64,000 bases of DNA, from contig NW_027271172.1 in assembly GCF_040938485.1 (NCBI RefSeq), positions 1,426,001-1,490,000 on the forward strand, written 5' to 3'. Source of the DNA: Diadema antillarum. Taxonomy: Eukaryota. The stretch's first letter is position 1. Every line of letters starts with the position of its first letter. Below, in pieces: positions 13,367 through 50,130 of this stretch. The translations under genes were made by a program, and so were the position numbers. The notes below the pieces were generated by a model. That model worked only from the letters and a program-made list of their open reading frames with translations. It was not told the origin of the DNA and ran no database searches.

Positions 13367-13415
<49 letters not shown>

Positions 13416-14355
13416 TACATGCGTGGACGGACACTATTTTGCAAATGTGTTGTGGTATAAGAATAGTAGGATTCAGTCTATCTAGTATTTCTTTCCAAAC
13501 CCGAGCGATGATTGGAAAGGGCAGTTGCTATATTTGCTATGATTAATAGATGCACAACGCGCATTCAGGCGTGTCCGTTTCAGAGTGGACATGGTCAGCA
13601 ATTATGGTAATGAACGAAAAAAAACAACAACAAATTAATAGCACTAACAGTGATACTAACACGGACCTCGGTTTGGATGCAAATAATATGGTCCGATCGC
13701 AGGGCTGCCACCATAGTGACACGACACAAACCAAAATAGACCATTATTTCCCTCATTGTGCAATTTGCAATGGTTTAATTGTTTGACATCTTAAACTGTT
13801 ACCATGATCACTTGATTCGTTGCGGATGGTGTTGAGAAATTATGAGGAAACGTTGCAAACCCGGAGTCATAGAGAGTATTGCAATCATTAATTTACTCCT
13901 TCTAGGTGTTGTCAACAGAATAGAAAAACAAACGTAAAAACACAACTGAAGTAGAATATGGCGAGCAGTGAATAAGGGTAAGAAAAAAAAATGAACTTCA
14001 AAAATCTCAAGCGCTTAGAAATATTCATCCGCACTGGAAAGCCTGAGTCATTAGATTTGAGTCAACGATTTACTGCAAAACTGTGAACCCGCTGAGAAGA
14101 TGACTCAAGATCACTCCTTGCAGAGTATTAAGCATCATTAAGCACAGTTTTTGCAATCAAAAAATTAAGGCAAACACTTAATTATCTATCAAAGGCAAAA
14201 AACAAAAACAAAGAAAGAACGAAAGGTGAAACCACATGAGAAAAAAAATGTATGAAAAATGCATAACAGTGTATACAAAATGTTTGATATACATTTATGA
14301 TCTGCAAAAAATACAATAAAATCGAACTGGTTTCTTTGTGTTCGAACCCCCTGAA

Positions 14356-14386
<31 letters not shown>

Positions 14387-20300: not shown

Positions 20301-23300
20301 GGGAGGTAACAAGGGATGAATCTTTGGATAAGGGTTTCCTTAGCCGAATATTTTGTTGCATTAATCTGAATCTTATTTCTAAGATCATCAGTGAGAAAAT
20401 TTGCTAAAAGTACAAACAAGCTTGATTTGCCTGAGTCAAAGTGAAAAAAAAATGACATCTACAGAAAATTAATAGAAGCTGTTGAGAGAGGGGTTCTTTC
20501 GTTGCATTAAACCGAATCGCATTTCGCTGATCCTCACGCAGGGATGGTGAAATACATGTATATAACCACGATGAAAGAACAGCGACCAATATTAATCCTC
20601 ATTTGTATACTCTTCAGATATCAACGAGTGCACGTCGAACCCATGCCAGCATGATGGAGCGTGTATCGACCAGCTAGGTTCCTTTGTCTGCACGTGCCAA
20701 CCTGGAACGAGGGGAACACTATGTGAGATCGGTGAGAGAGGATCTTTTTGAGAGAGAGTGTTTAAAGAGTATAGTAACGTTCTTTCGTTAGTCATTTTAG
20801 AGCCTCTTCTAGAACTGAACAAGTGGTTATAATCTTACAGGAGATGAAGATGGAAAAGAGGAAGACGCAACATAATGAAAGAAAGTATCCCAGCGTAGTC
20901 CATTCATCCGATGTAAAACTAAACGTTTCGAGGGATGTTAGCTGCGGCCGGTGTAGCGGCAGATAGCGTTCCGTGACAGAGAGTCTATCTTGACACTGGG
21001 CAGTGCCTGCCTGCAATAGAAATAGTAAATGATCAAGTATGGTTGCACATAATTATTGAAAGGATTCGGAGAACTACACGAGAGCGCAAAACTCTGCCAA
21101 GTTCACCGAATCACGATAGCATAATAGAACTGTTTTTTTTTTTTGTCTTGTATACACATCTTGGATGTTGATTGTGATCCAAATTCACCATCAAAAATAT
21201 TCCAAACTAACATGGCAAACAAACGAAAATATGAACAAACATACTAAAAAGCGCCAGCAAAAGCATAGCCACCTGAGTAGCAATAACAGGACGAGACATT
21301 ATTGTTAGACAACTTTCAGCACTGCTTATCTTTGCCGTGTGCATTCATTTTTTTTTCTCAAGAGACAGGTCTGTTTCTAAACAATGAGAAAATGACATCA
21401 GTACCAACAAAAATTTGCTTTGTAACGAATATAATGGATTTTCATCGCTTTTACAGCGTCCTATTTCAAGTAACGTTATGCTTATATGTGTGGCAGCAGT
21501 ACTATGTCGAAGTTATATTCTTTTTTTATTGAGCATAATCAAAACTAGTAAATCATAGTTTAGTCCATATATATGACACTACCAAATCCTTTTTTCCCCA
21601 AATACGTAATGAATGCACGTTTATTGTACTTATATATCCTTACTGAAATATACACTTATTAAAGTTATGTGTCATTGACGTGCAATGCCAAACCGTGCAA
21701 TATTCAGATTGGCTTTGATTATAGAGAATCATTAGACAACCAGAATAACAGAGGTCTCAAAATCAAAAACTCGATCGCACTAACACAGAATCTCGGGAAA
21801 ATTATTATGCGCTATATCAGAAATTCTACAATTTTCTTTCGCCATTGGGTATAGGTTTTGACAAATCTTGATCTTTACTAAAAACAAGCAAAGTCTTTAA
21901 AAAACGCATTTCTTATTTTTATGTCCATGTAAGATGAACCAGAACCATCTTAACATTCAAATTTATGTCTACATCCAAAAAAGGTCAACTGAAAATAATT
22001 ATTGTGCTCGATGCCATTATTACAGGCATTATAGGATGATGTTAAGGACATTTTGAAGTATGTCTCGTACATACAGGGTAAACATGTTATACACACTGTG
22101 CAAATGCATGTTGACTTTCACTGATTCATAATACCCTGGTCATCAATTTGAGGCCATGATAACATTAACTTGAGATTACTTTATATAATACGCCTATAAA
22201 ACAAACAAACAAACAAACAAACAAACACACGTTCTGAACCAAGATTCTGCCCGTGACTTCATCTGTCGATCGTTGATAAAATACTCTTATGCATAAAATA
22301 ATTTTGATTGCACCTCCCCCTAGACCAAGCATAACTTGTAGAGGAAGTCCACCCCCAAAATAGATAAGCTTCCAAAGAAAGAGAGAAATATTCCCTGAAG
22401 ACAGATACAAAAAATGACAACTGGATACGACATAAACATGATATGACATTTTCAAATTTCACATACATTTTTTTTTTGAAATCATTTATTGACAAGTCCT
22501 TATGAATACTGAAATCATCAAGTCGACGATGTCATGCTCTCACGTTTTCTTATTCATTTCATATACAGAAATTACAAAAAGGATCTCATATTTCAGATGG
22601 ATATAAAACTCATCTTAAAAACCAACCGTGATAAAGGGCTAAAAAGTATTAACTCTCATATTTCTTGGTATGGGAACATGCTTTTATTTGTATTAGCTAC
22701 AAATAATAATCTATCTTAATTTCATTTACAACATACATGAAAATTGTGAGGGTGTGACATCATCAACTTGCTCATTTTAATATTCATAAGGACTGTTCGA
22801 GAAATGTTTTCCGAAATAATGTGAAATTTTAAAATGTCCTAGCTTCCCCATTTCTTATCCAATTTTTGTATTTTTTCTATTATCCTGTAGGAATTCTATT
22901 TTTCTCTTTCTTTGGAAGTTTAACTAATATTGGGTGGATTTCCTCTTTAAAAGTTCCTCGTTTACTCTGTACCCGGTACATATATAACCAATTTATAGTT
23001 GTTCCAATGTAAAATGTGAAAACCATTCGGAGGTTTTCTTTGATATTGTCATTTTCGTTGACTTGTTATCCATCGTTAGATGTGAATGAGTGTGAACGCA
23101 ACCCCTGTTGGAATGGAGGAACCTGTGTTGATCTTATGAACAACTACACCTGCTCATGCCCCAGTTTTCTTGATGGCCCTCAATGCGAAATTCGTAAGTA
23201 AGAATTGGATTTATCGGGCTTACAATGTTTGGTAGGCCCAATGTCGACTCTTCATTGCGCTTAATGATGGCATAAAGTGTCACGATGTTGTAATGCCTTC

Positions 23301-26300
23301 CCTATATGTTACGTACAGTTGTCTGCAGGAATGGTTTTATAATCTTGAACCTGTTTTTGTTTTGACTTAGGAAGATTTTCAACGTCTTTTGAAAGTGTAT
23401 GTAATCCTTTATATATAAAAATAATTATGTGTCAAATAATTTTTTTTTTAGTAACGAGGCGCAGTTTTCGAAACAGTCATGTCACGTGACCGACAAAATG
23501 AAAAGGATTATGTTTTGTCTGAAAAAAACACACCAAACAAACATGATGCCAATGTATACGCTCTATCGTCCTTCATGAGACCATACTAAACATTCTCTGC
23601 GTCATGTGTCATTACATACGGTAAATTGTATTTTCAAAATTTAATTCAATCTTTGAGAGTATGGACCCTGACATATTTCCGGATTAATAAACCTTCGGAA
23701 TAACAGACCTTGGTAACGATAGAAATAAGCAGCTGTTACCCATATTCAAATAGTGGAATGGTTTCATCGCCTGACAAACGAGAATGTCCACATTTCCGAT
23801 TTGATATGTCAAATCAACAAGAATTATTGTGTTTCCGAAGTCAATGATGAAATGGTCGTGATTGCCATTCTTTATTCATGTATTTTCTTATTTTGACAGT
23901 GAGAAATTTCAGCATTCGCCTGGTTCATAACAGTGACAATTCGGTGCGTGGCAAGCTGGAGGTGCTGTGGAACAACACATGGACTAGCTTGCGCATCAAC
24001 ACGTATTATAGTCAAACTAACAATCTATTCTACAACAACGCAACTGCGGTTGCGTGTAGTCAGCTCGGGTTCACAGGGTACTCCTCTTTCCAGCAATTGT
24101 ATCATACGAGCACGGACAGCGTGGTCTTTGTCAATCTCGTTTGTAGCGGTCAGGAGACTGATCTCGGGCAGTGTCAACATTACTCCATTTTCCTATCAAG
24201 ACATTTTTATTTTTCATTCCGAGGACAAGAGATCACGTGTGCAGGTGACTCCCTGTTTCATCTTTCTCGATCAAGACCTTATACGATATGCTGTCATTTG
24301 CAAAGTTTTTGAGTATTTGATCATGTGTTGTATGTTTGCCTTATTTCCCTTTTGAATTTCATTTTGTCTTGCCTTTATTTTGTGTCTTTTTATCTGTTTT
24401 ACACGCAGCGTCCCGTGCAGTTGTTTCTAGTATAGCTAACTATATACAGCCCAGTCTAATTAAAGGACAAGTCCACCTTCATATACATGTGGATTGAGTG
24501 AATGCAGCAATATTAGTAGAACACATCAGTGAAAGTTTGGGGAAAATCGGACAATCCGTTCAAAAGTTATGAATTTTTAAAGTATCTGCGTAGTCACTGC
24601 TGGATGAGAAGACTACTACAGTGTATGATGTCATATGCGTACAACCATATAAAGAAAATAAAAAGAGAATTTCACAAAACGTTACTTTTTGAATTAAGTG
24701 CACATTTCTTCGACTTGTTACTGACATTATGTTAAGGGTAATATTTTTCCCCTGACTTCTGAAAGAGAGAAGTCGAGTGTTATCTTTTTATGTGAGGAAA
24801 GTGAGAAAATCTTGAATTTTCTTTATACTTTCTTTATATTTTGGAGTGACCTCAGGGATCACTCGAAGATTTTGGAGTGATCCCAGCTGACGTCACTCTA
24901 AAACGAGCAAAAATGAACATTTTCACTAAAAATTCACTCCAATTTCACTCTAAATTCACTCTTTTTTGTATTCACTCCTTAAAGAGTGAAAATTTTCACT
25001 CGATTTTTTTAGAGAGTAGTCTTCTCATCCAGCCGTGACTGAGCGGAAACTTCAAAAATTCATAACTTTTGAACGGATTGTCCGATTTTGCTCAAACTCT
25101 CACTGATGTGTTCTACGAATGTTGCTGCATTCATTCAACCCACATGTCTATGAAGGTGAACTTGTTCTTTAACAGCGTCTGGTCGGGCTATAATATAGCT
25201 TGCCTTTGGCAATTGAAGGAACTTCCCGAAATGACAAGAAAGTAGATTAGGCCCATCTTACACTCGCATGTGCCAGATACATTGAGTAGACCTATATGAT
25301 ACAATATCACTATATCATGCCGGCCTGTCGGTCTTATCATCTTTATTGTTGTTGCGTGTTGTTGTTGTTTTCGTCGTCGCCGCCATTGTTGTTGTTGGGA
25401 GAGATAATTTACAATGCTATTATAATATCGCTGAACAGGAAAGCGGCTGCTTAGAGAATATTCCGAAGCCATACACCTAAAGAGTGCACCTGTTCGATGA
25501 ATTTCAGTTCTGAAAGTGAAAAACTTTCTCTCGTGTGGGAAGGAACAATGCCACCTCCCCCTTCCCCAATCCCACCCCGCGCGTCTTAGCGATCCCCCGC
25601 TTGTGTATTCCTATATAGCTACGACAGAAATCCACGGTGTTCCCAAGCGACAAGTACGGCCTATGTCTGAATATTAGGTATATCCGAGTATGGATAAGTA
25701 TAGCTGAATTAAAGATAATATTGTATCTTTTATGTGAGCACTTCTCTTGTGTCACAGATTCTTATTAGTTTCATTCACAGCTGTTTCCCAAAGATCTTTC
25801 ATAGTAACAACATTTTATTTCAATCTAGTCTGTATAGGCCCTATACTGATATATCTGACTCTTGTGTTTACTTTTTGTGTTTGCTTGTTGTATTATCCGT
25901 ATGTTTAGATTAATGGTGACAGTGAACTGAGCTTATGTTTCCTTGGTCTGGCCCTGTGTGCTGCATCAAAGGGATCGTATAGTTTTGATTAAACCTAACT
26001 TCAGGTTTCTAACATTTGAGAGTGAAATAATGAGAAACCTTTTATGAAATATGAAAGAAACTGATGAAGTAATTCCAAGAAGAGTTCCACGTTTGATGAA
26101 AATGGGTTTTGAAATGGCTGATATATCCAAACAAGGTGATCCTATAATAAAAGGCTTGACCCACCTATCATTAGGATTGCTTAATTTGTTTTAATTGTTT
26201 TTGGATGTCTCAGCCACTCCAAAACCAATTTTCCTCTAATAAACTTTGAATTCCTGGTATAGAATGACATGGTCTGAACTTCATAAGTGGTTTCTTGGTA

Positions 26301-27899
26301 TCTCACAAAAATTTTAAGACCCAATTCTCATCTCCACCAATACTATCACCCTTTTAAATGATACCGTTTTAAATAACACAGTTTGCTTGCCGTTGCTAAC
26401 CACCTGAAGCGAACCACGAGGAACCGTGTTATTATAGTGTGGGTGTGTAGAGGATGGATCACGTCTACGGGTTAGCACTACTGATCATATAGGTCAGTGG
26501 TTGGCAACCTAATCTCATTGGTTACGGGAATTTATGAAAACAAAAATGACAGCGAAATTATGTGTAGTGTTATGCTTTATGTAGAACTGTTTTCCAGTGG
26601 CCAAATTGATTTCTTTAGTAATGCAAGTACATCGAATGGATAACATATAAAGGAAATTGCTGTAGTTTTCCTTATAATTGCATCATATTATTAGTAAAAG
26701 CTACAACATTGTGGTTTCAGCGATCCGTTAACAATATTTCCTTATCTTTATTTTCTAAGTTGCACAACGATCAGCCGGCTTGGTGATTTATATAACAGAT
26801 ACATGAGTAGCGCACATTCTATAGGATGTTTTTTGAAATGGCATGTCAGATCATACTCGTGGTCTCATTGTCTTGTTTTTTCTCTTTTTTTTGTAATCAT
26901 GTCTTTATTGGTAAAAAAAACATATCAATGAACATGTTAACATAATCTTATGATATACAAGGTCTCGACACATGACAGGTAGTGACGCACTTATAAAATA
27001 TTAACAGTGAAGAAGTTATAATATATAGTTATTATGTAAAACAAATTTGGTTGTTGACAAAACTATCAGACAAAAATCACCGTACATTTTCCCAGTACGT
27101 TTATACATATCACATATGCATTATTGTCAAACCAACTTTACTAATTTGTATATGAAATATCAATGGTACATACTACACAATTTAATTGCTGAAGTGTTAA
27201 CATTAAAAAAAATGCATTATCTGTTCGTGATACATATTACATTTTTGAAATACAGTAAATGGCAATCCAACTACTAATAATCTCTTTATCCAGGATACCC
27301 ATTACATAATTTTAAGTGTCTAAATGTAAACCAATAATTGATTGTTGTTATAGTTGACAGGATACATGTTACATTTTTAAAGTGTCAAGTGTCAATCCAG
27401 AAAATCATTATATTTATCCAGCATACACAACTTTTACATTACCTAGTGTCATAAATAGGACCTATACACAAAGTGTTTAAAGTCTTCCCAAGTCTGCTCA
27501 TTTCTTGCACAGTTATTACTCTGAATTCCCTTATATTTTGTCCATCTTGTCCATTTTGTCTCATTAGAAACCCAAGTCCGTCTGACAGGCGGCTCAACCC
27601 CTGACCTAGGTCGAGTGGAGATCTTCTACCAGGGTACGTGGGGAACGGTGTGCAGCAGTCGGTGGGATGACGAGGACGCCGGTGTGGTGTGTCGCATGCT
27701 CGGGTACAGCTCGGGCGAGACTACCTCAGGACTCAGTGTCAGTAGCAAGCCTATGGTACTTAGTGACGTCCAATGTGTCGGCTCGGAAACCGACATCGGT
27801 GCTTGCGAGCACTCGCCATTTATGACGGGGACATGTAACCAACAATCAACAAGCCAAGGGCAAGAAGCCTGGGCGTCTTGTTATACTCTTCCTAACTGA
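9728..27899 (+). CDS. Gene 1: secreted protein, signal peptide + novel N-domain + 9 EGF + 2 SRCR (about 657 aa, 13 coding exons)
   Basis: Exons 9728-9730, 10670-10724, 11560-11784, 13210-13311, 14610-14723, 14847-14960, 15690-15803, 17177-17290, 18784-18897, 19683-19796, 20618-20731, 23080-23193, 23900-24244 and 27568-27899 all have GT-AG ends and compatible phases. They sum to 1974 nt with a single terminal stop. (Counting the ATG exon there are 14 segments.). Confidence 0.8.
10670..10724 (+). CDS. Gene 1 exon 2, signal peptide ([18 protein letters not shown])
   Basis: ttttccag|AAC...CTG G|gtaag, 55 nt, phase 0 to 1. Hydrophobic; conserved in all three copies. Confidence 0.75.
11560..11784 (+). 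CDS. Gene 1 exon 3, unrecognised 4-Cys N-terminal domain
   Basis: catgcag|CG...CCT G|gtggg, 225 nt, phase 1-1. [75 protein letters not shown]. Confidence 0.7.
13210..13311 (+). CDS. Gene 1 EGF-A exon
   Basis: [34 protein letters not shown], 6-Cys EGF spacing, donor G|gtagg. The acceptor position is uncertain (see findings). Confidence 0.8.
14610..14723 (+). CDS. Gene 1 calcium-binding-type EGF exon B1
   Basis: cttcag|AT...G|gtgag, 114 nt. [38 protein letters not shown]. Confidence 0.9.
14847..14960 (+). CDS. Gene 1 EGF exon B2
   Basis: 114 nt, phase 1-1. [38 protein letters not shown]. Confidence 0.9.
15312..15490. mobile_element. Tc1/mariner-pogo-type MITE
   Basis: TA|CAGTGTACTCCCGTTATAACGAA...TTCGTTATAACGGGATTCCACTG|TA. 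Absent from the matching intron of gene 2. Confidence 0.75.
15690..15803 (+). CDS. Gene 1 EGF exon B3
   Basis: 114 nt. [38 protein letters not shown]. Confidence 0.9.
17177..17290 (+). CDS. Gene 1 EGF exon B4
   Basis: 114 nt. [38 protein letters not shown]. Confidence 0.9.
17397..17559. mobile_element. MITE with GGCGGATCCAG TIRs
   Basis: cagtgggtggcggatccag...ctggatccgcccctg, flanked by ttaca on both sides. Confidence 0.6.
17877..18022. mobile_element. Harbinger-like MITE
   Basis: gggg-ac-cgtttcatgaaac...gatgaaacgcccc inverted ends. Confidence 0.5.
18281..18431. other. Assembly gap (151 N)
   Basis: Run of N inside the gene 1 intron between B4 and B5. Confidence 1.
18432..18653 (-). mobile_element. 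tRNA-derived SINE, CORE-like, cut by the gap
   Basis: Minus strand has A box (ggcatagtgg) and B box (agttcgattccc), then gtccttggaaagg...ctctcgacccagg, resembling the CORE domain. Confidence 0.55.
18784..18897 (+). CDS. Gene 1 EGF exon B5
   Basis: 114 nt. [38 protein letters not shown]. Confidence 0.9.
19683..19796 (+). CDS. Gene 1 EGF exon B6
   Basis: 114 nt. [38 protein letters not shown]. Confidence 0.9.
20618..20731 (+). CDS. Gene 1 EGF exon B7
   Basis: 114 nt. [38 protein letters not shown]. Confidence 0.9.
22340..22946. mobile_element. Kolobok-like non-autonomous element
   Basis: agaggaagtccaccc...gggtggatttcctct|ttaa. Confidence 0.45.
23080..23193 (+). CDS. Gene 1 EGF-C exon
   Basis: cgttag|AT...ATT C|gtaag. 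[38 protein letters not shown]. Confidence 0.9.
23900..24244 (+). CDS. Gene 1 SRCR-A exon (divergent 4-Cys SRCR)
   Basis: gacag|TG...GCA G|gtgac, 345 nt. Motifs [37 protein letters not shown]. Confidence 0.8.
24464..25168. mobile_element. Kolobok-like MITE with about 170 bp TIRs and a nested CACTC-family MITE
   Basis: TTAA|AGGACAAGTCCACCTTCAT...ATGAAGGTGAACTTGTTCT|TTAA. Nested element at about 24828-25016. Confidence 0.75.
27568..27899 (+). CDS. Gene 1 terminal exon, canonical 6-Cys group A SRCR (SRCR-B)
   Basis: cattag|[11 protein letters not shown]...[15 protein letters not shown]...VVCRMLG...VQCVGSE...GACEHS...GTC...WASCYTLPN then stop. Confidence 0.9.
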
Positions 27900-39400: not shown

Positions 39401-42400
39401 CCGTTTGTAAGATGTAAGAATCGGACCACTGGGCTAACATCTTTCATAGCCCCGAGGACGACTCTTCAGATCCAAAGGTTAGAAATGAAATAACGCCTTC
39501 CCAACTGGGTGAAGTTCTCTTAAAGAAGACAAAATACAATAAAATTCGAAGGTCTGATACGGCTAGATGCTGGTTACACTGATGATTCATGCGTGCATTC
39601 CGCAAGCTCGTTATTCCTAACACGCAAAACTCCCGACCCTGTGGGTTCCCTTTATGATAATGCCATAATATTGATATTGATAGGGTTTGTTAATCCGAAT
39701 ACTTGTTTCATTAATCCTAATGTTATTCTAATGATGATCACAGTAGGAGAATTCATAATAATACCGATATGAATCCTCTTTACTCTTCAGATATCGATGA
39801 GTGCGCGTCCTACCCATGTCAACATGATGGATTGTGTATTGACCAGTTGGGCTTCTTTGAATGCAACTGTCAAAATGGAACGACTGGAACATTATGCGAG
39901 ATTGGTGAGCGGGGATCTTTTAGAGAGTGTTTCAGAGAGTATAAACGTTCGTACGTCGGTTATTTTATAACCTCTTCTAGCTATAACTATACTAAGAGGT
40001 GATTATTTAACAGCAGATCAAGATGAAAAATATGATCACAGTGAGGCAGGCACAAGATAATTACGAAAGCAAGTGTGTCTGAGCGGTCCATTCACCCGTT
40101 GATTAGGCCGTTGATCAACTAAATTTGTTATCTGTTGAAGATGTGTATATTGCACTAATAAACCTTTGTCCTCAAGGACCTAGCCGGATGAAGAATATAC
40201 ATTCACATTAGAATCAACTCAACATTATAGGCCAACTTCAAATCTTATCATCACTGAAGGTTTTATGGCTATTTTTAGGGAGCGTAAGAGGCCTATTATG
40301 ATAATGCTATATAGGACTCTGACGCGAAATCCGTCTGTGAGATTTGGGACATTGGGTTAACATGTTTGGTAACACCAAGAACGACTCTTTGTTTCCTGAG
40401 GTCATTAAATGTCATGGTAGATTCTCAGCTTTGGAGAAATTCTCGTTAAAAGTCAAAGTACAATACAGATGTGATATGTCTTAATGCCAGTTATTCTAAG
40501 GGTTCATAATTATATTCGGCAAGCTCGTTATTGCAAACACGGAAAATTACGGAGAAGTTCTGGACTTTTCGTAAGTCCGAAGATTGAAAGTCCGAAAACT
40601 GATAATCTTTGCTTTTACGATCATTTGTTGCATTAATGTGATTCTTGGTTTCATGATCATCAATGACGATGACCTAATACAATTGGAGAACAACTACAAA
40701 TACGAATCCTTATTGCTCTACAGATATCAATGAGTGTATTTGCAACCCATGCCAGCACGATGGAGTGTGTTCCAATCACGTGGGCTCCTTTAACTGCACA
40801 TGTCAACCCGGAACGACTGGACCACTATGCGAGCTCGGTGAGCAAGGATTTTTTTTTAGAGTGTTTTAGAGAATCCTCGCATTTTTTTGTAGTTCATTAT
40901 AGAGACTCTTCATTCATCCAATGTCCTTTTCAATAATCATCAATATTCAATGAAATATAAAGATAAAACGAGAACTTCCCCTTCGAAGTTTGAGATTGGT
41001 TTTGATGAGTAATTTGAGGTTAAGAATATGGGATTCCGCCCACGCTTACGCCAGCAACAATTTTCAAAGCATATAACGATATGCCCATAGTCACGACAGT
41101 AAGCTATTATGATGATTGTAATATTAATGATAATATTGATAAAAATAATAAGAACAATAAGAATAACAATAGTATAACAATACAATATACAGTTGCTGCA
41201 GGTGGTCGGAGCTGGCTAACCCTTGAAAAATGGACATATCGAGGAAAGTTATCCAAGTATGCATGAGTATACAATTCAAAACAACTTTGATTTACTCTCT
41301 AAAGAAAAAGTCGAGTGAAGATATTCACTCTTGAAAGAGTGAATACAACAAAGAGTGAATTTTGAGTGAAAATGTTCATTTTCACTCATTTTGGAGTGAC
41401 CTCAAGGATCACTCCAAAATCTTCGAGTGATCCTTGAGGTCACTCCAAAATGAGTGAAAATGTTATCAAAACGGTCAGTCAAATGACGAGAAATTTCTTC
41501 CACAAGCATGAAAGTTATCCAAATATGCCTCGTTGGTCGCAACGAGCTTCAAAACGTAAACCTCTACGTGTTATTGATAATATCAAAGGATTAAGATTTC
41601 GATTTCTTATCGGCGAAAAACAAAGCTTGAAAACGGAGCCAAATTGCTAGCTCGTTGTTAGGGCATATGAGGGTAAAATAAAAATTACGATGTGAAAATA
41701 ATGCGACACTCTCCAATATGAATCGTCATTCCTCTTCAGATATCAATGAGTGCATGTGCAACCCATGCCAGCATGATGGACTGTGTACCAACCAGGTGGG
41801 CTCATTCGTCTGCAACTGTCAAAACGGAACGACTGGAACACTATGCGAGCTTGGTGAGCGAGGATATTAAAGAGAGTGTTTATAGGGAATATTAACGGTC
41901 TTTTACTTGGCCATTCTAGAGGTTCATCTAGGAGGAAACAAGCAAACAGGTGGAAAAGAGCAAGACTGTATGACTACAGCGAAGGAGACGCAAAACATGA
42001 AGGAATTAAATTATGTCTGAGCGCTCCACTCACCCGTAATTGATAAAAATACACTTGTACAAGCTTGTGATCAGCTAGACATGTGTTCATTGCATCATTA
42101 CATTTGTCGTTCTTCAAAAGTTTTCCTGACGAAGCTGGGCATATATAAGTTCACAATAGTAAACTTATAAACTAATTCATATTTAGGCCAATTTCAAATC
42201 TCATTATTTCTTAAGATGTTTATGATTATTTTCATGGAGAGTATTTTTTTTTATCATGATGATAATTCTTAGGACTTTGACGCGAAATCCGTGTGCAAGA
42301 ATCGGACCACTAAAATTGGGCTATAACGTCATGTTTAGTAACCCTATAAGGACGACCGTATAGATCTCGAGCTATTTAATGTCGAGATAAAAAGACTTTC

Positions 42401-45400
42401 CAGCTGGGTAAAGTTCTCGTTAAAAAGTTTAAAAAGTACAACACAGGTAAGGTACTCAGTATGGCTTGATCCTGGTTATTGCATTGGCTCATACAATATT
42501 TGGCAAGCTCGTTTGGTATACCCAACACGCAAACATCCTATAGGCCCTACCTGATGGTTCGTTGATCCGAAAATCAGTAGGGTTTGTTTATCCGTACATT
42601 GCTTCATTGATCCGAATTTTTATTTTTTTAAATGACGCTGGAAACATAAAGGCTTGGGCTCGTGGCAACAACATGATGTTAAACGAAAACAAAACAGAAG
42701 TCGTCCACATTGTGTCACAATTTCGGAAAAGAATTGAGTCTGTTAGCCTCACCATCGATGGAGCTGTCATAAATGCGTCCAAATCTGCCAGAGATCTCGG
42801 CGTTATCGTGGACAACTCCTTGGATGTAAAGGAGCACATTCGCAAGGTGTGCCGGGCTGCTTCTTCTGGCATCTACAGGATCAGGACAATCCGGAAATAC
42901 CTCAACCAGTGCTCCACAGAACGACTTGTTAATGCTCTTGTAACATCGCATCTGGATTATTGCAACAGTTTGCTCATCAACTTACCTGCATGTCATCTCG
43001 CTCCACTTCAGCATATACAGAATACTGCTGCCCGTCTCATCACCTGTACTAGAAAGTATGATCGCATCACCCCTGTCATCCGCAATCTCCACTGGCTGTT
43101 AATCCCACAACGAATCAAGTTCAAGATTCTTCTCATCACCTACAACATCATCCATAACCGTTCACCTATATATCTAACTGACCTGATCTCATCGAAACCC
43201 AGACCGGATACACACATTAACCTAAGATCATCATCTGCAACCCAACTTAAACTTGGCCCTCGCACCCACAATCGTTATGGTGACCGTGCTTTTTCCGTTT
43301 GTGCCCCCCTTCTTTGGAACACTCTCCCTACTCACATTCAGACCTCCACCTCCGTTGACATCTTCAAAAAGAAACTTAAGACTCATTTATTTTTAGAGCA
43401 GAATTAATGATTATGTAGGCCCTGTATGCATTTGTAGTAAATTATTTGTTATTCTAAGCTGATTTGTATGTTTGGTTGTTTAGCATTGTAAAGCGCTTAG
43501 AAACATGTTGTATTAAGCGCTAAATAAATATTTCATATTGTTATTGTTATTATTAAACCACAATGGGATGAGAACCCTGAATTCTACCAATATGAATCCT
43601 TGTATTCTCTTCAGATATCAATGAGTGCATGTGTAACCCCTGTCAACATGATGGAGTGTGCATCAACGAGGTTGGCTCCTTTGACTGCTTCTGTGAACCC
43701 GGAACGACCGGAAGATTATGCGAGATTGGTGAGCGAGGATCTTTAGAGAGTGTTTTTAGAGAATATAAACGTTCGTTCGTTAGTTATTTCAGAGACTCTT
43801 TAAAATGAGTCAAACAAGATTTGAAAATTTTACCAGAAGAAAAAGTTAGAAAAAGCAAGATTTGACCACAGCGATGCAGACGCAAGGCATTTCAGAAAGT
43901 GTGTCTTAGTGGTTAATTCATCCATTTATCAACTAAATTTGTAAATTTGTGATCAACAGAACATAATGTGTGATTGAATTTAGAAACCTTTTGCAGTGAA
44001 ACTGATGACGCATATACATAACATGAGTAAAACATTTAAACTTAGGCCAACTTCAAATCTAATGATTTCTTAATGTGTGTTTATGATTATTTGTAGAGAG
44101 AGTAATTATGATGAAAATGCTAACCAGTACTCTGACATGATATCAGTCTGCTAGAATCGAACCATTGGGCAAATGTTGGGTTACCATCTTTCGTAGCTCC
44201 TAAAACGACCCTGGTCATTAAGTGTTGTGATGAGATGACTTCCCAGCTTGATGAAAGTTCTCTTAAATAATCATTGCCGAAGCACAATAAAGGCGTGGTG
44301 TGGTTTGACACTTTTTTCCCCGATGTTACATGTATTCGGCAAACTCGTTTTTGTTAATTGTTGGTTCGGAAAATAAACAGTGTTTGTTTATCCGAATATC
44401 TTGTTGCATTGATCCTAATCTTAAATCTATGATACTCAGGGACGATGACATACATGTACTAATGTAAGCACGATGAGACAACAGCTACCAATATTAATCC
44501 TCATTATATACTTTTCAGATATCAACGAGTGCACGTCGAACCCATGCCAGCATGGTGGAGAGTGTGTCGACCAGTTGGGCTCCTTCGTCTGCACGTGCCA
44601 ACCTGGAACGACCGGAACACAATGCGAGATCGGTGAGAGAGGATCATTTATAGAGAGTGTTTTAGAGAGTGTTAACGATATTTCTTTAGTCATTATAAAG
44701 GTTCTTCTGGGAGGTTACAAGAGATGATAATCTTACCAGCAGATAAAGGTGGAAAAGAGCAGGAGATGGTTGCGGCAAAGTGTGTCTGAGTGATCCATTC
44801 ATCGATTGATCAACTGATTATGTAATGTCAGAGGTTGCAAACTTCTACAATGTTTCAACTGAATACGGTTGGATCCATACAAATTCCGCTTGTGAGCTGT
44901 TATCTTGATGAAGTGTTTTCCTTCGCATCAGTAAAACTCAACATTTACGCTTACGCTGATACTTATTATTTTTTGTTGTTGATTGATGTATTTCCTGAGT
45001 CCATCTTATATCGTAATAAAATGCGTCCTACGTTGAGTGAAAGTTCACTTTAATAACCAAGTCAAATAACAACAAAGGCGTGAGATGGCTTAATGCTGCT
45101 TATTCTGAAAGTTTATATTTTCAGTAGGCCCGCTTTTCCTAAAGTTTCGTTGATGCGAAAGTTCTTTTTTTTCATCCGATTATTTGTAACAGAAGTCGAA
45201 ATACATCTATGATCATCAATGACGATGATATACAGTGTACATTGTGTAATCACAAATGGAGAAGGGCTAGCAATATGAATTCTCATTACTCTTCAGATAT
45301 CAATGAGTGCATGTGGAACCCATGCCAGCAAGGTGGAGAGTGTACCAACCAGGTGGGCTCCTTTGTATGCAATTGTCAACCCGGAACGAGTGGAACACTA

Positions 45401-48400
45401 TGCGAGATTGGTGAGCGAGGATCTTTATAGTAGAGAGTGTGTCAAAGAATTTTTAACGTTAATTCGCCTGGTCATTAAAAAAAAAGTAGAATTGTTTCAA
45501 GCCGTAACGCTTAGAGGCCGTTGTCCAAGTCAAGCGATTTGTTTATATGGACAAACGGTCTCCTCCATCTGTATACTTAAAGATGTGTCGTCATGAAACA
45601 TGATTATGGACTGTGCACACCTGTTTATATGTCCATGACTTGTAAATATGTTTGATATTGTCATACTTATTTATATTCTCTACACGTGGAGAAATATAAC
45701 TTACTGAAACTGAAATATTATGTTAGGAGTTCTTCTGGGAGTAATCAACAGGTGATAATCTCACAGAAGAATCCAGAAGCAAGATGTGATCACAGCAAAG
45801 AGGACAGAAGACACAAAAAAGTGTGTCCACGTGGTCAATTCGTTCGCCTGTATAAACTAAACATATTAAAGAATGTCAATTTGTGGTTACAGTAGAGTCT
45901 ATCTTGACTGTAATAGATTAATGATAATACATGTAATAAGATATACTAAATGGTAATAGAATGTCGTTGCATATCATGAAGTTTAGCAAGCTACTACGGC
46001 CCCATAGAACTGTTTGTGTCCTAGAAAACATCTTGGATCCGGATTATGATCCAGATCACCACCAAAAATATTCCTAACTCGGAGGTCTGCGGTAAGGGGA
46101 ACGTCTTTCAGGACGGGGGGGGGGGGGGGGGGAGGGGGTGGGGGTGGGGGTGGGGGTGGTTCAACGTGTCTACTGGAAGATTCATACCATCAATCCATGA
46201 TTGTCTATATATTTAGTATTGTGTGTTCTTTTTGTGTTTGCTTGTTTTGGTATTATTTTGTTTTGGATAAATGACGAATAAACGGAACTGAGCATGCTGT
46301 GTTTCCTTCTGGTATGGCACCTTGTTGAGGAGTTCGCAGCATTCGCAAGTTTCCCGTCGAAGACGAGTCCCAAGAATACTCGGCCAGGTGTTTATGGGAA
46401 ATACGTGTTACAGCAAAACCAGTCCATCCTCAACGGGTTTTAAAGTCTATAGACCAAGCATATATCTTACATGCTTCCCTGCATCTTTTTTTTTTTTTTT
46501 TTTGGGGGGGGGGGGGGCTAATCATATATAAAGTAACTTGGAAACATGCAAGTTATACTCGGCCCAGGTTAGGGTGTATTTCATATCTTTTGTTCATCAC
46601 ATTAGTTTTGTACCAATGATTGACAGATGATGCCACTGGCAGGAGCTTTTTTTTTTTTGGGGGGGGGGTGGGGGAGGGGTGGCGCTTATCCAAGGAATCC
46701 AGAGAGAAATAGTAGAAAAAATAATTATGTATAGGGCACGTATTTAGACATTCATTTGGTCACATATTCAAGTGATGTTGAGGGTAACATGAATCAACAC
46801 AAGCTAACATGCACTTGCACTTTGTCTTTCCTTTAATATGTGTACATGGAGTGCATCACTACACCTTTTGTTGTCGTTAGTAATCCTGATGAAACATATT
46901 CCTTCACGCCAGTAAAACTCAACATTTTATCTCCAGTTGACATTATTATAATGAGCAGTTTATTGTTATGCAGGACTTCAGACGCGCTTGTTTAGTTGTT
47001 GTTTTCGTTGATTTGTTATCCCTCGTTAGATGTGAACGAGTGTGACAGCGACCCCTGTTGGAATGGAGGAACCTGTGTTGATCTTATGAACAACTACAAT
47101 TGCTCATGTCCCAGTGACCTTGGTGGCTCTAGCTGCGAAATTCGTAAGTGAGAATAGGATTTATAGGGATTTGTATGGTTGGTAGCCGATTCTTCAGTTT
47201 TGACAGAAGTCAATAAATGCAACGAAAGACTTTCTGCCCTTGGTCGTAGTTGCCTTAGAATCCTAGACCTACTGCCTAAATGGTTTCAAAATTGTGATAT
47301 GTCCAATTTCCTTTAAGAGTTTTGACTTCAGAAAGGTTGCAGCGTCTTCTTGAACAGCATTATTATGATCCTCTGGAAAAACAGATAATTTCTCATAATA
47401 TGTATTTTTTCCTCAGGAACTATGGGCGCAGTATTCGTAAGTAGTCATGTCATCTGACCAACCAAACGAAAGTGATTGATGATATACAATGCGGAGTCGA
47501 GATCATGCTTAGCGTTTGCTATAGCTGTGGTGCCCGTAATGAGCTCAACACTCACGAGCCATACAGCCACGATCTCAACACTCACGAGCCATACAGCCAC
47601 GAGCTCGACACTCACGAGTCATACAACCACGAGCTCGACACTCACGAGCCATACATCCCACGAGCTCGACACTCACGAGCCATACAGCCACGAGCTCAAC
47701 ACTCACGAGTCATACAGCCCACGAGTTCAACACTGAGTGAACAAGGCTAAAACGCCCACGTGTAGAGATCGTGGGCCATTTTTTGCCTTTGTCTCTTCTG
47801 AACATGTTTTGTATAAATCTAGATGGGGGGGGGGGGGGATGGATGTAGATATGGAGGCGTTTTTCTTTCTTTCTCCCCACCTCGTCCCACACTGTTCGGT
47901 GGAGCAAAACGATATACTTCGCCCTACCCGTGTAAAGCCATATTTTTTAAAAGCTAATCTACCAAAGAAACTCTTCAAATTTCCGCTTTGATATATAAAA
48001 ATCAACAAGAAGTGCATGATGTGTCGGAAGTTCATGACTAAATAGCCGTAATTAACAGGTTTATTCATGCATCTTCTTATTCTGACAGTGAGAAGTTTCA
48101 ACATACATCTGGCCAATAATAATGGCGACTCGCTGAGGGGCACCCTAGAGGTACTGTGGAACAACATATGGAAAAGCTTGCGCGTCTATTACTCTTACAA
48201 ATTCAATGACAACGCAGCTGCAGTTGTGTGTCGTCAACTCGGGTTCACCGGGCACTTCTCTAGATCGTTCCAGCAATGGTTTCATGTGAAGGACATCTTG
48301 ACCCTTTTCAGTCTCGAGTGTAGCGGCCAGGAGGATGATCTTGGGCAGTGCCGGAATCGCGTCGGATTCCAAAGTACAACATATTATTGGAGAAGACGTA

Positions 48401-48467
48401 TTACGATCACGTGTGCAGGTGATTTTATTTATTTTTGTTTTGTTTTTTTCAAATTCAGAGACCTGCG

Positions 48468-48558
<91 letters not shown>

Positions 48559-50130
48559 GTGTATTTTGGTATGTGAGTGTTTGGTGATGTTGTGTGTTTG
48601 CCTTATTTCCTTATCAATTTTGTTTTGTCATTACTTTTATTAGTGTTTTTTGTTTGTTTCACACCCAAATTCATGTGTTACGTTATAATGTTATCTTATG
48701 AAATAATGACAGAAAGTATAGATTAGGTCAACCAACTCGAATTGCTAGCTCCAACAGGCTTAACAGTTAGTCTAATACGGTATATCACAATAAGGTACCT
48801 GTCAGGGTTTTCGTTATACACCTATATCTTTTTTCGTATGAGTTGTTGTTCGTCGTTGGGATGAATATCTTGTAATGCTATGAATATCGCGAATCGGGGG
48901 GGGGGGGGGGAGAGGTAGAGAATTACCACAAAATGTAAACCTCGATCAGCGTGCACCAGATTGTTGAAATTCAATTCTGAAATGCAAAACCTCCCTCGTG
49001 TGAGAAAGGAAAAAACTGTCATTATTTCATCCTCCCTCCTTCTCTGTGAGCCCTCGCTTGTGTATTCTCACAAATTGATATCAAATGTATTTTGCCCCCC
49101 CCCCCCCCCCCCCCCGGTGGGGAAATCGGTTGCTCTGTCCTGTGTGCGTGATATGTGTGTTGGGATGCATAAATGTTTGTTTTACTAGTAATTGTCTCTT
49201 ATTCCAGGTGCACACTCATGTGTCACATATTCCTTTTTTTTTGTTTTTATCAACAAGTGATTCCTCATACGATCAATTCATGATTGTCTGTATTTTATAG
49301 TCTTGTGTGTTCTTTGTGCATGTCAGATATTATTTCGGTTCGGATAAATGACGAATAAACTAAACTGAGCATGTAGGTACTATAAAAGAGATTATGGGTA
49401 GCATTTGGTCTTATTGGCTACAGGAAATTAAGAAAACACACATGATGGCAAAATTCTATAATTATGTAATGATTTGTTTTTTTCAGGAACGAATTCTTCA
49501 AGTCATATAGGTACGTTCAATAGATAACATCAAAAATTGCTGCAGTTTCCCTGTATGATTGCATTATATCTGTACAAGATAGAAAATTGTCAATTCAGTC
49601 CTTTGTCAATAAAATTTTCCTTATTTTCTTTTTTCCAGTTGCACAATGATCCGCATGTTGATTTATAACAGACATTCAAAGCCTCCATCAACAAGCTTTT
49701 GAACTTACATTTCGCACCAGATCATGATCGTGGCCTCCTTTTCCAAGTTCAGATGGTAACTCTGAATTCGTCTCTATTTTTGTCTCCGCGATCTTCAGAA
49801 ACCCAAGTTCGTCTGACAAACGACTCTACCCCAGACCTAGGTCGAGTGGAGATCTTCTACCAGGGTACGTGGGGAACGGTTTGCAGCAGTCTGTGGGATG
49901 ACGAGGAAGCCGGTGTGGTGTGTCGCATGCTCGGTTACAGCTCGGGCGAGACTACCCCAGCACTCAGCGTCAGTAGCAAGCCTATGGTACTTAGTGACGT
50001 CCGATGTGTCGGCTCGGAAACCGACATCGGTGCTTGCGAGCACTCGCCGTTTATGACGGGAACATGCAACCAACAATCAACCAGCCAAGGGCAAGAAGCC
50101 TGGGCGGCTTGCTATACCCTTTCTAACTGA
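32616..50130 (+). CDS. Gene 2: paralog with the same architecture (about 653 aa)
   Basis: Exons 32616-32618, 33313-33367, 34004-34231, 37453-37554, 38891-39004, 39791-39904, 40724-40837, 41740-41853, 43615-43728, 44519-44632, 45297-45410, 47030-47143, 48089-48418 and 49799-50130. Sum is 1962 nt with an open frame. Confidence 0.8.
33313..33367 (+). CDS. Gene 2 exon 2, signal peptide ([18 protein letters not shown])
   Basis: tttttag|AAC...G|gtaag, 55 nt. Confidence 0.75.
34004..34231 (+). CDS. Gene 2 exon 3, N-terminal domain
   Basis: 228 nt, phase 1-1. [76 protein letters not shown]. Confidence 0.7.
34541..35592. mobile_element. 1052 bp non-autonomous DNA transposon, TAGTC termini, 3 bp TSD (TAA)
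   Basis: TAA|TAGTCCATGGG...CCCATGGACTA|TAA with about 325 bp imperfect TIRs. The empty site cccttaactct is seen near 62178. Confidence 0.85.
36209..36287 (+). pseudogene. tRNA-Thr(AGT)-like sequence, not a canonical tRNA
   Basis: TAGCTCAGTCGGTAGAGC, anticodon loop CTAGTAA, GGTTCGA. The acceptor stem is bulged and a T-run follows. Confidence 0.6.
37453..37554 (+). CDS. Gene 2 EGF-A exon
   Basis: Same peptide as gene 1 EGF-A; donor G|gtaag. Confidence 0.8.
38891..39004 (+). CDS. Gene 2 EGF exon B1
   Basis: [38 protein letters not shown]. Confidence 0.9.
39791..39904 (+). CDS. Gene 2 EGF exon B2
   Basis: [38 protein letters not shown]. Confidence 0.9.
40724..40837 (+). CDS. Gene 2 EGF exon B3
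   Basis: [38 protein letters not shown]. Confidence 0.9.
41740..41853 (+). CDS. Gene 2 EGF exon B4
   Basis: [38 protein letters not shown]. Confidence 0.9.
42638..43554 (+). mobile_element. 5'-truncated L2/CR1-group LINE (RT C-terminus and 3' tail)
   Basis: ORF 42562-43407 with [42 protein letters not shown] and [10 protein letters not shown]. 3' stem-loop agcgctta/taagcgct at 43492-43521 and a (TTA/TTG) tail. Confidence 0.9.
43615..43728 (+). CDS. Gene 2 EGF exon B5
   Basis: [38 protein letters not shown]. Confidence 0.9.
44519..44632 (+). CDS. Gene 2 EGF exon B6
   Basis: [38 protein letters not shown]. Confidence 0.9.
45297..45410 (+). CDS. Gene 2 EGF exon B7
   Basis: [38 protein letters not shown]. 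Confidence 0.9.
47030..47143 (+). CDS. Gene 2 EGF-C exon
   Basis: [38 protein letters not shown]. Confidence 0.9.
47541..47733. repeat. 30 bp minisatellite, about 6.4 copies
   Basis: Unit gagctcgacactcacgagccatacagccac; two units are 31 bp. Confidence 0.95.
48089..48418 (+). CDS. Gene 2 SRCR-A exon (divergent 4-Cys SRCR)
   Basis: gacag|TG...GCA G|gtgat, 330 nt. Confidence 0.8.
49799..50130 (+). CDS. Gene 2 terminal exon, SRCR-B
   Basis: cttcag|AA; 332 nt including TGA. Nine amino-acid differences from gene 1. Confidence 0.9.

What the first reader, a model, noticed from the sequence alone, without database searches (positions are those of the whole stretch)
23900..48418. Variable/constant SRCR pair: SRCR-A is hypervariable and has lost one disulfide
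Seen: SRCR-A in both genes lacks the WGTVC cysteine (WTSLR/WKSLR) and the later HNC-type cysteine, keeping 4 Cys. Known: in group A SRCRs those two cysteines pair with each other, so the loss is coordinated and not simple decay. Seen: SRCR-A is about 50% identical between genes, with indels in aromatic-rich segments ([15 protein letters not shown] vs [10 protein letters not shown]; [14 protein letters not shown] vs [12 protein letters not shown]), while SRCR-B has 6 Cys and is about 92% identical. Inference: removing the disulfide released two loops that now act as a diversifying binding surface next to a constant domain.
Basis: partly seen in the sequence, partly recalled or inferred. Interest (0 to 1): 0.72.

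Follow-up and report, generated by a model that had tools for sequence, protein, structure and literature searches.

The report
Four-cysteine SRCR domain diverging between urchin paralogs
In a tandem family of sea-urchin (Diadema) genes, one of two neighbouring SRCR domains has lost a disulfide and its usual calcium-binding residues and differs between gene copies mainly in three blocks, but about half of the contrast with its "constant" neighbour comes from recent copying of that neighbour between genes.

Summary
Both SRCR-A exons (23900-24244, 48089-48418) have 4 Cys and lack the C2 ("WGTVC") and C7 cysteines, which pair in canonical SRCRs. SRCR-A is 51% identical between genes 1 and 2. SRCR-B has 6 Cys and is 92% identical.

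The window is almost certainly Diadema antillarum. It holds three tandem genes, each an EGF array followed by SRCR-A and a terminal SRCR-B; the other haplotype appears to have four.

- About half of the contrast is history. SRCR-B lies in a tract of about 11 kb that is about 91% identical between genes (dS 0.18 against 0.54 for SRCR-A).
- In age-matched pairs SRCR-A changes only about twice as fast as SRCR-B.
- SRCR-A is not decaying. It models as an SRCR fold, its splice sites are intact in all 7 copies, and its framework has dN/dS (omega) of about 0.4-0.5.
- Its differences cluster in three blocks, including the former C2 and C7 segments. All canonical cation-site residues are replaced.
- My site-model test favours a class with omega of about 6 (p=0.003, or 0.03 with three close paralogs). 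SRCR-B shows none (omega 0.46).
- That test rests on only 4 sequences.
- Alleles are nearly identical, so the variation is between paralogs.
- Paired C2/C7 loss recurs in unrelated SRCRs.
- Expression and binding are untested.

The parts
13200..23192 (+). Gene 1 EGF array. It has a first EGF-like exon (core 13200-13310), seven calcium-binding-type EGF exons (cores starting at 14609, 14846, 15689, 17176, 18783, 19682, 20617) and a last EGF exon (core 23079-23192). An N run at 18281-18431 was left untouched.
   Evidence: tblastn and regex annotation. The same exon order is joined in the public D. setosum protein P0049. Pfam finds EGF and EGF_CA on P0049.
23900..24244 (+). SRCR-A exon of gene 1 (A1): 115 codons, phase 1-1, 4 Cys. 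The longest divergent segments are residues 32-46 and 92-108.
   Evidence: AF2 gives pLDDT 79.5 and pTM 0.75, with low confidence at residues 31-40 and 101-110.
27568..27899 (+). SRCR-B exon of gene 1 (B1): 6 Cys, last coding exon, stop at 27897-27899.
   Evidence: P0049 ends at the homologous ...CYTLSN.
27566..38552 (+). Homogenised tract, copy 1. It covers the B1 exon, the gene 1-gene 2 spacer and the first EGF exons of gene 2. It is 88-95% identical to 49797-64000 and beyond.
   Evidence: Self-blastn. The flank 300 bp upstream of the B exon does not align, while the exon is 93% and the downstream flank 89% identical.
37443..47142 (+). Gene 2 EGF array: first EGF exon, seven cbEGF exons (cores starting at 38890, 39790, 40723, 41739, 43614, 44518, 45296) and a last EGF exon (47029-47142).
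48089..48418 (+). SRCR-A exon of gene 2 (A2): 110 codons, phase 1-1, 4 Cys.
   Evidence: AF2 gives pLDDT 82.5 and pTM 0.77. Foldseek matches solved SRCR domains at TM 0.68-0.74.
48160..48207 (+). A2 variable block 1 (residues 24-39). It contains the former C2 position (R31) and the positions that align with the canonical Asp-Asp of the cation site.
   Evidence: Cation-site residues are from PMC7043408.
48253..48291 (+). A2 variable block 2 (residues 55-67).
48352..48399 (+). A2 variable block 3 (residues 88-103). It contains the former C7 position (T97, the site with the highest posterior for omega>1). The segment is rich in Arg and aromatic residues.
49799..50130 (+). SRCR-B exon of gene 2 (B2): 6 Cys, terminal exon with stop.
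49797..64000 (+). Homogenised tract, copy 2. It covers B2, the gene 2-gene 3 spacer and the first EGF exon of gene 3 (core 63456-63566). It is interrupted by an array of about 161-bp units at 55901-61059. Gene 3 continues beyond the window; its A3 and B3 exons would lie at window-equivalent 84121-84450 and 88926-89266.

Best explanation
Shown:
- The window carries a young tandem family in a Diadema sea urchin. There are three genes on this haplotype and apparently four on the other.
- Each gene encodes about 7-9 EGF-like domains followed by two single-exon SRCR domains, with the stop codon in the SRCR-B exon.
- A sister family in the same genome has a canonical 6-Cys pair of SRCR domains in the same order. 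Relative to it, SRCR-A lost the C2-C7 disulfide and every acidic residue of the canonical SRCR cation and ligand site.
- That loss predates the split of the paralogs and is shared with the D. setosum homologue.
- SRCR-A still models as an SRCR fold, and its framework is under purifying selection.
- Amino-acid differences between paralogs are concentrated in three blocks. Two of them surround the former C2 and C7 positions, which form the canonical ligand face.
- SRCR-B is under purifying selection. It has also been homogenised between genes by gene conversion or unequal crossing-over.

Inferred:
- The remodelled face of SRCR-A, which is rich in aromatic and Arg residues, is a paralog-specific, calcium-independent recognition surface. 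It diversified after gene duplication, partly under positive selection.
- The EGF array and SRCR-B provide a common scaffold or a shared interaction.
- The variation is a germline repertoire of paralogs with copy-number differences. It is not allelic hypervariability.
For: Architecture:
- Exon order and the spliced model agree with the public D. setosum protein P0049.

Loss of the disulfide and of the cation site:
- The sister family keeps WGTVCDD, LDD and NCxHxED.
- The cation-site residues D1019, D1020, E1086, D1058, D1059 and N1081 are from PMC7043408.

Fold:
- AF2 gives pLDDT 82.5 for A2 and 79.5 for A1. Foldseek finds solved SRCR domains at probability 1.0 and TM about 0.7.

Exon integrity:
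- Splice sites and reading frame are intact in all 7 copies.

Selection:
- My GY94-type ML model gives SRCR-A M0 omega 0.96. M1a against M2a gives 2dlnL 11.5, p=0.003, with 15% of sites at omega about 6.
- With the three close paralogs only, 2dlnL is 6.9 and p=0.03. SRCR-B has omega 0.46 (below 1, p=0.008) and no omega>1 class.
- None of 21 replicates simulated under M1a exceeded 5.1.
- The SRCR-A framework has omega 0.40-0.48. The block after C6 has omega 2.3-2.7, and 8 non-synonymous against 0 synonymous changes between A2 and AX.
- Variable sites are clustered in SRCR-A (permutation p<0.001) and not in SRCR-B.
- EGF exons have omega 0.23-0.33.

Cross-species conservation:
- The unusual A1 loops are largely kept in D. 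setosum, where the domain is 84% identical.
Against: - Whole-domain omega is about 1 and cannot be distinguished from neutrality.
- The site test rests on 4 sequences (or 3), uses my own implementation, and had only 21 bootstrap replicates.
- Codons with several nucleotide changes, recombination and alignment around indels are known to inflate such tests.
- Against local intron divergence, the block after C6 is only about twice the neutral rate. Simple counts are not individually significant.
- The block at the former C2 position has omega of 0.65-1.3.
- My composite 'face' partition was defined partly after seeing the flagged sites.
- Alleles differ by 0-2 nucleotides.
- No RNA run was on record, so inclusion of the exon in transcripts rests on one public gene model from another species.
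- No signal-peptide exon was found, so secretion is assumed.
Confidence: 0.5

Rival explanations
1. Relaxed constraint. When the canonical cation site and its stapling disulfide were lost, SRCR-A lost its ligand function. It persists as a folded spacer between the EGF array and SRCR-B. Its former binding loops then drift almost neutrally, while the core stays constrained by folding and by the need to keep the frame for SRCR-B.
For: - Whole-domain omega is 0.96 and not different from 1.
- All canonical ligand residues are gone.
- The variable loops have the lowest model confidence.
- Exon divergence is no greater than that of flanking introns: A2/AX is 92% in the exon against about 88% in introns, and A2/A3 is 85% against 79%.
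- The simple excess of non-synonymous changes in the loops is marginal.
Against: - M2a fits better than M1a (p=0.003 and 0.03), with omega about 6 in 15-23% of sites.
- Non-synonymous divergence in the block after C6 is about twice the local intron divergence in each of the three pairwise comparisons among A2, AX and A3, which share branches.
- The unusual A1 loops are mostly kept in D. setosum.
- There is no stop or frameshift in 7 copies despite dS up to 0.67.
Confidence: 0.3
2. History only. SRCR-A and SRCR-B are under the same selective regime. The contrast arises only because gene conversion or a partial tandem duplication recently copied the SRCR-B exon and its downstream tract between genes.
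For: - A tract of about 11 kb starting at the SRCR-B acceptor is 88-95% identical between genes. The intron just upstream does not align.
- Synonymous differences: genes 1-2, SRCR-A 27/68 against SRCR-B 12/76 (p=0.0015); genes 1-3, 31/71 against 6/77 (p=4e-7).
Against: - In pairs with equal synonymous divergence (2-3, X-3) SRCR-A still has about 1.7-1.9 times the non-synonymous changes (p=0.015-0.03).
- For the third age-matched pair, 2-X, the non-synonymous excess is not significant (p=0.21), although the N:S ratio differs between SRCR-A and SRCR-B (p=0.04).
- omega is 0.96 for SRCR-A against 0.46 for SRCR-B.
- Differences are clustered in SRCR-A only.
Confidence: 0.12
3. SRCR-A is a decaying exon that is skipped or non-functional, or the genes are pseudogenes.
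For: - No RNA evidence was obtainable.
- The exon is phase 1-1, so skipping it would keep the frame.
- No 5' signal-peptide exon was found.
Against: - AG/GT splice sites and the open frame are intact in all 7 copies.
- The framework has omega of about 0.4-0.5.
- The exon is included in the public D. setosum gene model.
- The fold is predicted with confidence.
Confidence: 0.06

Closest known systems
Sea-urchin SRCR multigene expansion (group A SRCR genes, often with EGF-like domains, mostly in tandem clusters; PMC10855680)
   Same: The domains are single-exon SRCRs. EGF-like is the commonest partner domain in that expansion. The genes are tandemly arranged and duplicated within the lineage. This genome also carries very large SRCR exon arrays.
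   Different: That survey describes groups A (6 Cys), B (8 Cys) and a 7-Cys group C. It does not describe a 4-Cys domain lacking C2-C7. Here one of the two domains is such a variant and has also lost the cation site.
Canonical cation-dependent SRCR ligand site (SALSA/DMBT1 SRCR8, MARCO, CD6, CD163; PMC7043408)
   Same: The fold is the same (Foldseek TM about 0.7 to 6sa5, 2oy3 and 1by2). The variable blocks of SRCR-A lie at the sequence positions that build this site.
   Different: All residues aligned with D1019, D1020, D1058, D1059, N1081 and E1086 are non-acidic in SRCR-A. The face is aromatic and Arg-rich, so any binding would have to be independent of cations. This is inference.
Other SRCR domains lacking both C2 and C7 (for example in Chlorella vulgaris, volvocine algae, Oculina patagonica, Owenia fusiformis, Saccostrea, Acanthaster planci)
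   Same: The same pair of cysteines is lost together. In a 79-domain sample, 9 domains lack both and 3 lack only one (Fisher p=3e-9). In a PDB alignment, human CD163 SRCR8 shows WGTVG at the C2 position.
   Different: These domains are unrelated in sequence (at most 39% identical) and sit in other architectures. No paralog comparison was made for them.
CEACAM-type receptor evolution (variable N-domain under positive selection plus gene conversion among paralogs; PMC8860441)
   Same: It is a works-like comparison only. One domain of a tandem paralog family diverges quickly while gene conversion reshuffles or homogenises parts of the genes.
   Different: The fold is different (Ig), the animals are different, and the microbial ligands are known. 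I took this only from the paper's title and abstract listing.

Membership tests
SRCR superfamily (Pfam PF00530) | Profile match above the curated cut-off | tested here: met
   A1 38.0, A2 47.3, B1 82.3 and B2 78.5 bits against a 26.1-bit cut-off.
SRCR superfamily (Pfam PF00530) | SRCR fold | tested here: met
   AF2 models of A2 and A1 have pLDDT 82.5 and 79.5. The A2 model matches solved SRCR domains at probability 1.0 and TM 0.68-0.74. These are models, not solved structures. The A1 model was not fold-searched.
Group A SRCR domain | Six conserved cysteines forming C2-C7, C3-C8 and C5-C6 | tested here: not met
   SRCR-A has only C3, C5, C6 and C8 in all 7 copies and in D. setosum. SRCR-B and the sister family have all six by alignment. 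Disulfide bonding itself was not tested.
Group A SRCR domain | Absence of the group B pair C1-C4 | tested here: met
   Neither SRCR-A nor SRCR-B has extra cysteines at those positions. AX has one extra Cys near C8.
Cation-dependent ligand-binding SRCR (SALSA/MARCO type) | Acidic cluster after C2, before C5 and around C7 | tested here: not met
   SRCR-A has ...SLRVYY / ...LFSLEC / ...STTYYWRRR in place of CDD / LDD / NCxHxED. SRCR-B has SS for DD and keeps only one Asp of LDD. The sister family keeps all of them.
Diversifying immune-recognition gene family (works-like category, not a sequence family) | omega>1 at a subset of sites on a surface | tested here: inconclusive
   M2a is favoured over M1a at p=0.003 and 0.03. 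This rests on 3-4 sequences and my own code, and surface exposure was not measurable.
Diversifying immune-recognition gene family (works-like category, not a sequence family) | High allelic polymorphism | tested here: not met
   A1/A1h differ by 1 nt, A3/A3h by 2 nt and A2/A2h by 0 nt. The preprint reports genome-wide heterozygosity of 2.52%. Only one individual was examined.
Diversifying immune-recognition gene family (works-like category, not a sequence family) | Expression in immune cells, or induction by challenge | not testable with these tools
   No RNA run is on record for this stretch.

The most novel reading that the evidence does not exclude
Paired loss of the C2-C7 disulfide defines an unrecognised, recurrent class of 4-Cys SRCR domains, seen here from algae to echinoderms. 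In this class the former cation-binding face is freed to evolve new specificities that do not need calcium. In Diadema this class is used as the variable module of a germline repertoire of paralogs with copy-number differences. It sits beside an SRCR domain that is kept uniform by gene conversion, which would be an SRCR-based analogue of a variable and constant domain pair.
Probability: 0.2. Interest if true: 0.7.

Novelty: new variant of a known kind. Interest (0 to 1): 0.45.

Why it matters
Sea-urchin SRCR genes are a textbook example of expanded innate-immune families, yet it is not known how individual domains gain new specificities. This locus offers a compact, testable case. The SRCR fold is kept, but the canonical calcium site and its stapling disulfide have been replaced by aromatic and basic segments that differ between tandem paralogs. 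It also gives a caution for scans of raw sequence: comparing identities between two domains of duplicated genes can mislead when gene conversion has reset one of them. Diadema antillarum has suffered mass die-offs, so recognition genes specific to this lineage are of practical interest. No link to disease is shown here.

Tried and rejected
- RNA evidence. The look-up of sequencing runs found only DNA-type runs. The laid contigs were genomic and showed no exon-exon joints. Expression and exon inclusion therefore stay open.
- DNA of the D. setosum homologue. The look-up of encoding contigs has no record of P0049, so cross-species dN/dS could not be computed. Only protein identities are given.
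- More genomic DNA of the haplotigs C1601 and C450. The order of genes on the second haplotype, and whether gene X is an extra paralog, rest on counts of hits and on 3.3-kb loci.
- Signal-peptide or 5' exon. Translated comparison of the three upstream regions gave only matches in all frames, which look like non-coding or repeat sequence.
- Topological discordance between the SRCR-A and SRCR-B trees. I dropped this argument because with four taxa the unrooted topologies are the same. The evidence for different histories is the synonymous and flank divergence instead.
- AX as a divergent allele of A2. I rejected this because the flanking introns are only about 88% identical, with large indels.
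- Bootstrap. A first 60-replicate run timed out. Only 21 replicates were completed.
- Burial of variable sites. Model coordinates are not returned, so this was not tested. Variable sites are not enriched in predicted loops over strands (14/44 against 26/65).
- Joined exons. Exons were searched by reference, and the public protein P0049 served as the spliced model.
- The N run at 18281-18431 was left as it is.
Full report
WHAT IS THERE

The window is G000:C284:1426001-1490000 of a 1.75-Gb assembly in 2,963 contigs. These figures match the draft Diadema antillarum assembly described in a preprint: 1.73 Gb, 2,964 scaffolds, 84% duplicated BUSCOs and 2.52% heterozygosity. The closest public protein is a Diadema setosum "uncharacterized protein isoform X2" (P0049, 510 aa).

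ORF listing, tblastn and motif annotation show three tandem genes on the + strand with the same architecture:
- a first EGF-like exon;
- five to seven calcium-binding-type EGF exons;
- a distinct last EGF exon;
- an SRCR-A exon;
- an SRCR-B exon that carries the stop codon.

Gene 1 spans 13200-27899 and gene 2 spans 37443-50130. Gene 3 starts at 63456 and ends about 25 kb beyond the window. The SRCR-A exons are phase 1-1 and the SRCR-B exons start in phase 1. P0049 joins the homologous exons in exactly this order and ends at the same C-terminus. I therefore used it as the spliced model and did not join exons myself. No 5' exon with a signal peptide could be found.

THE OBSERVATION

- SRCR-A1 is 23900-24244 and SRCR-A2 is 48089-48418. 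Both match Pfam SRCR above threshold, as do the SRCR-B exons.
- SRCR-A has four cysteines and SRCR-B has six.
- In a 94-sequence alignment the missing cysteines fall in the C2 ("WGTVC") and C7 columns.
- C2 and C7 are partners in the published disulfide pattern C1-C4, C2-C7, C3-C8, C5-C6 (PMC3100851).
- A1/A2 are 50.9% identical and B1/B2 are 91.7% identical.

FAMILY CONTEXT

The genome holds seven SRCR-A/SRCR-B pairs:
- three on C284 (genes 1, 2, 3);
- two on C1601 (A1h, one nucleotide from A1, and a further copy AX/BX);
- two on C450 (A2h, identical to A2, and A3h, two nucleotides from A3).

The assembly contains both haplotypes. The simplest reading is therefore three genes on one haplotype and four on the other. 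AX is not an allele of A2, because its flanking introns are only about 88% identical and carry large indels. Allelic differences are 0-2 nucleotides per exon. The variation is thus between paralogs and not between alleles.

A sister family on four other contigs has the same order of two SRCR exons, but both are canonical. They have six Cys and keep WGTVCDD, LDD and NCxHxEDxGVxC. SRCR-A is therefore derived. It lost C2-C7 and, with it, every residue aligned to the cation-site residues of SALSA SRCR8: D1019, D1020 and E1086 for one site, and D1020, D1058, D1059 and N1081 for the other (PMC7043408).

The D. setosum homologue shares the 4-Cys state and most of the unusual A1 loops, and its SRCR-A is 84% identical to A1.

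Paired loss of C2 and C7 is not unique. Among 79 unrelated SRCR domains, 67 have both cysteines, 9 lack both and 3 lack one (Fisher p=3e-9). Proteins with such domains come from Chlorella, volvocine algae, a coral, an annelid, an oyster and a sea star. The survey of invertebrate SRCRs that I read names groups A, B and a 7-Cys group C, but no 4-Cys class. A phrase search for "four cysteines" with SRCR found nothing relevant.

HOW MUCH OF THE CONTRAST IS HISTORY

- Self-comparison shows a tract that starts within two bases of the SRCR-B acceptor. It runs through the spacer into the first EGF exons of the next gene: 27566-38552 against 49797 to about 64615, at 88-95% identity.
- The intron just upstream of SRCR-B does not align between genes 1 and 2. 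Around SRCR-A the flanks are near random (JC 0.65-0.67), while the exon is at 0.37.
- Synonymous differences confirm different ages. For genes 1-2, SRCR-A has 27/68 and SRCR-B has 12/76 (p=0.0015). For genes 1-3, the figures are 31/71 and 6/77 (p=4e-7).
- For genes 1-2 the ratio of dN between SRCR-A and SRCR-B (0.345/0.041, about 8) splits into about 3 from dS (0.54/0.18) and about 3 from omega (0.64/0.23).
- In pairs with equal synonymous divergence (2-3, X-3) SRCR-A has about 1.7-1.9 times the non-synonymous changes of SRCR-B (p=0.015-0.03). For pair 2-X the excess is not significant (p=0.21).
- SRCR-B is therefore "constant" partly because it was recently copied between genes.

SELECTION

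- Pairwise Nei-Gojobori omega is as follows.

| Comparison | omega |
|---|---|
| SRCR-A, A1 against A2, AX and A3 | 0.60-0.64 |
| SRCR-A, among A2, AX and A3 | 1.1-1.2 |
| SRCR-B | 0.23-0.61 |
| Concatenated EGF exons | 0.23-0.33 |

- I wrote a GY94-type F3x4 likelihood model, with these results.

| Data set | M0 omega | omega=1 test | M1a against M2a | Positive class |
|---|---|---|---|---|
| SRCR-A, 4 sequences | 0.96 | not rejected | 2dlnL 11.5, p=0.003 | 15% of sites, omega about 6 |
| SRCR-A, 3 close paralogs | 1.30 | not rejected | 2dlnL 6.9, p=0.03 | 23% of sites, omega about 5.7 |
| SRCR-B, 4 sequences | 0.46 | rejected, p=0.008 | 2dlnL 0 | none |

- In 21 data sets simulated under M1a the largest statistic was 5.1.
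- Candidate sites in A2 numbering are 26, 34, 37; 63, 65-67, 73; and 92, 94, 95, 97, 99, 100. Residue 97 is the former C7 column, and 73 aligns with D1058.
- By region, the framework has omega 0.40-0.48 and the block after C6 has 2.3-2.7. The block around the former C2 has only 0.65-1.3.
- Variable sites among A2, AX and A3 are clustered (bin-variance permutation p<0.001). Those of SRCR-B are not.

Caveats on the selection tests:
- there are very few sequences;
- the code is my own;
- several flagged codons need more than one nucleotide change;
- the family shows recombination;
- the composite 'face' partition was defined partly after the fact;
- against local intron divergence the excess in the block after C6 is only about two-fold, and simple counts are not individually significant.

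STRUCTURE

With a 94-sequence alignment, AF2 models A2 at pLDDT 82.5 and pTM 0.77, and A1 at 79.5 and 0.75. The lowest confidence falls in the divergent segments. The A2 model matches solved SRCR domains (DMBT1, neurotrypsin, M2BP, MARCO) at TM 0.68-0.74. Coordinates are not returned, so exposure of the variable sites could not be measured.

READING

The most likely account (about 0.5) is that SRCR-A is a folded SRCR domain whose canonical calcium-dependent face was replaced. The replacement is a set of aromatic and Arg-rich segments that became paralog-specific, partly under positive selection. The EGF array and SRCR-B stay conserved, and SRCR-B is also homogenised.

The main rival (about 0.3) is relaxed constraint on a face that lost its function. 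A history-only explanation (about 0.12) is weakened by the age-matched pairs. Decay or exon skipping (about 0.06) is weakened by intact splice sites, the open frame and the constrained framework.

Expression could not be tested, because only DNA-type runs hold the stretch.

VERDICT

This is a new variant within the known sea-urchin SRCR expansion and not a new kind of system.

That agrees with my identification.

Noticed in passing
window 55901-61059: Arrays of a unit of about 161 bp, in both orientations, fill the gene 2-gene 3 spacer. They interrupt the otherwise 94%-identical tract, and the gene 1-gene 2 spacer lacks them.
   Followed up: partly
L005 (G000:C1601:10815-14141), AX exon: The extra paralog AX has a fifth, unpaired cysteine four residues before C8 (RRRCITVTC).
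   Followed up: no
G000 contigs C284, C1601 and C450: There is a likely copy-number difference between haplotypes. C284 has three SRCR-A/SRCR-B genes, and C1601 plus C450 have four. The A2 copy on C450 is identical in nucleotides to the window's A2.
   Followed up: partly
G000 contigs C297, C995 and C81: More than a hundred SRCR exons lie at a spacing of about 740 bp. All are about 47-48% identical to SRCR-B. These are giant tandem SRCR arrays elsewhere in the genome.
   Followed up: no
window 42562-43407: A 281-aa open frame lies in the intron between the fourth and fifth cbEGF exons of gene 2. It has no Pfam match and may be a remnant of a mobile element.
   Followed up: partly
window 31345-31614: Another first-stage note (s1-229908) reports a fold-back with hammerhead-like motifs here. 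It lies inside the homogenised spacer tract, so a second copy should exist near 53700-54000. I did not examine it.
   Followed up: no
window 18281-18431: A run of N lies inside the EGF region of gene 1.
   Followed up: no
window 48455-48560 and 27900-27920 / 50131-50160: A (TA)n microsatellite starts about 37 bp after the A2 donor. (GA)n runs follow the stop codons of B1 and B2.
   Followed up: no
window 1423-1948: A GC-richer stretch has overlapping long open frames on both strands. The one frame I scanned (1423-1779, + strand) has no Pfam match. It lies upstream of gene 1 and was not explained.
   Followed up: partly
window 27570-27896 and 49801-50127 (SRCR-B): SRCR-B is also non-canonical. 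It has SS in place of the Asp-Asp after C2 and a five-residue insertion between C7 and C8. The HxEDAGV motif is missing, although the sister family keeps it.
   Followed up: partly
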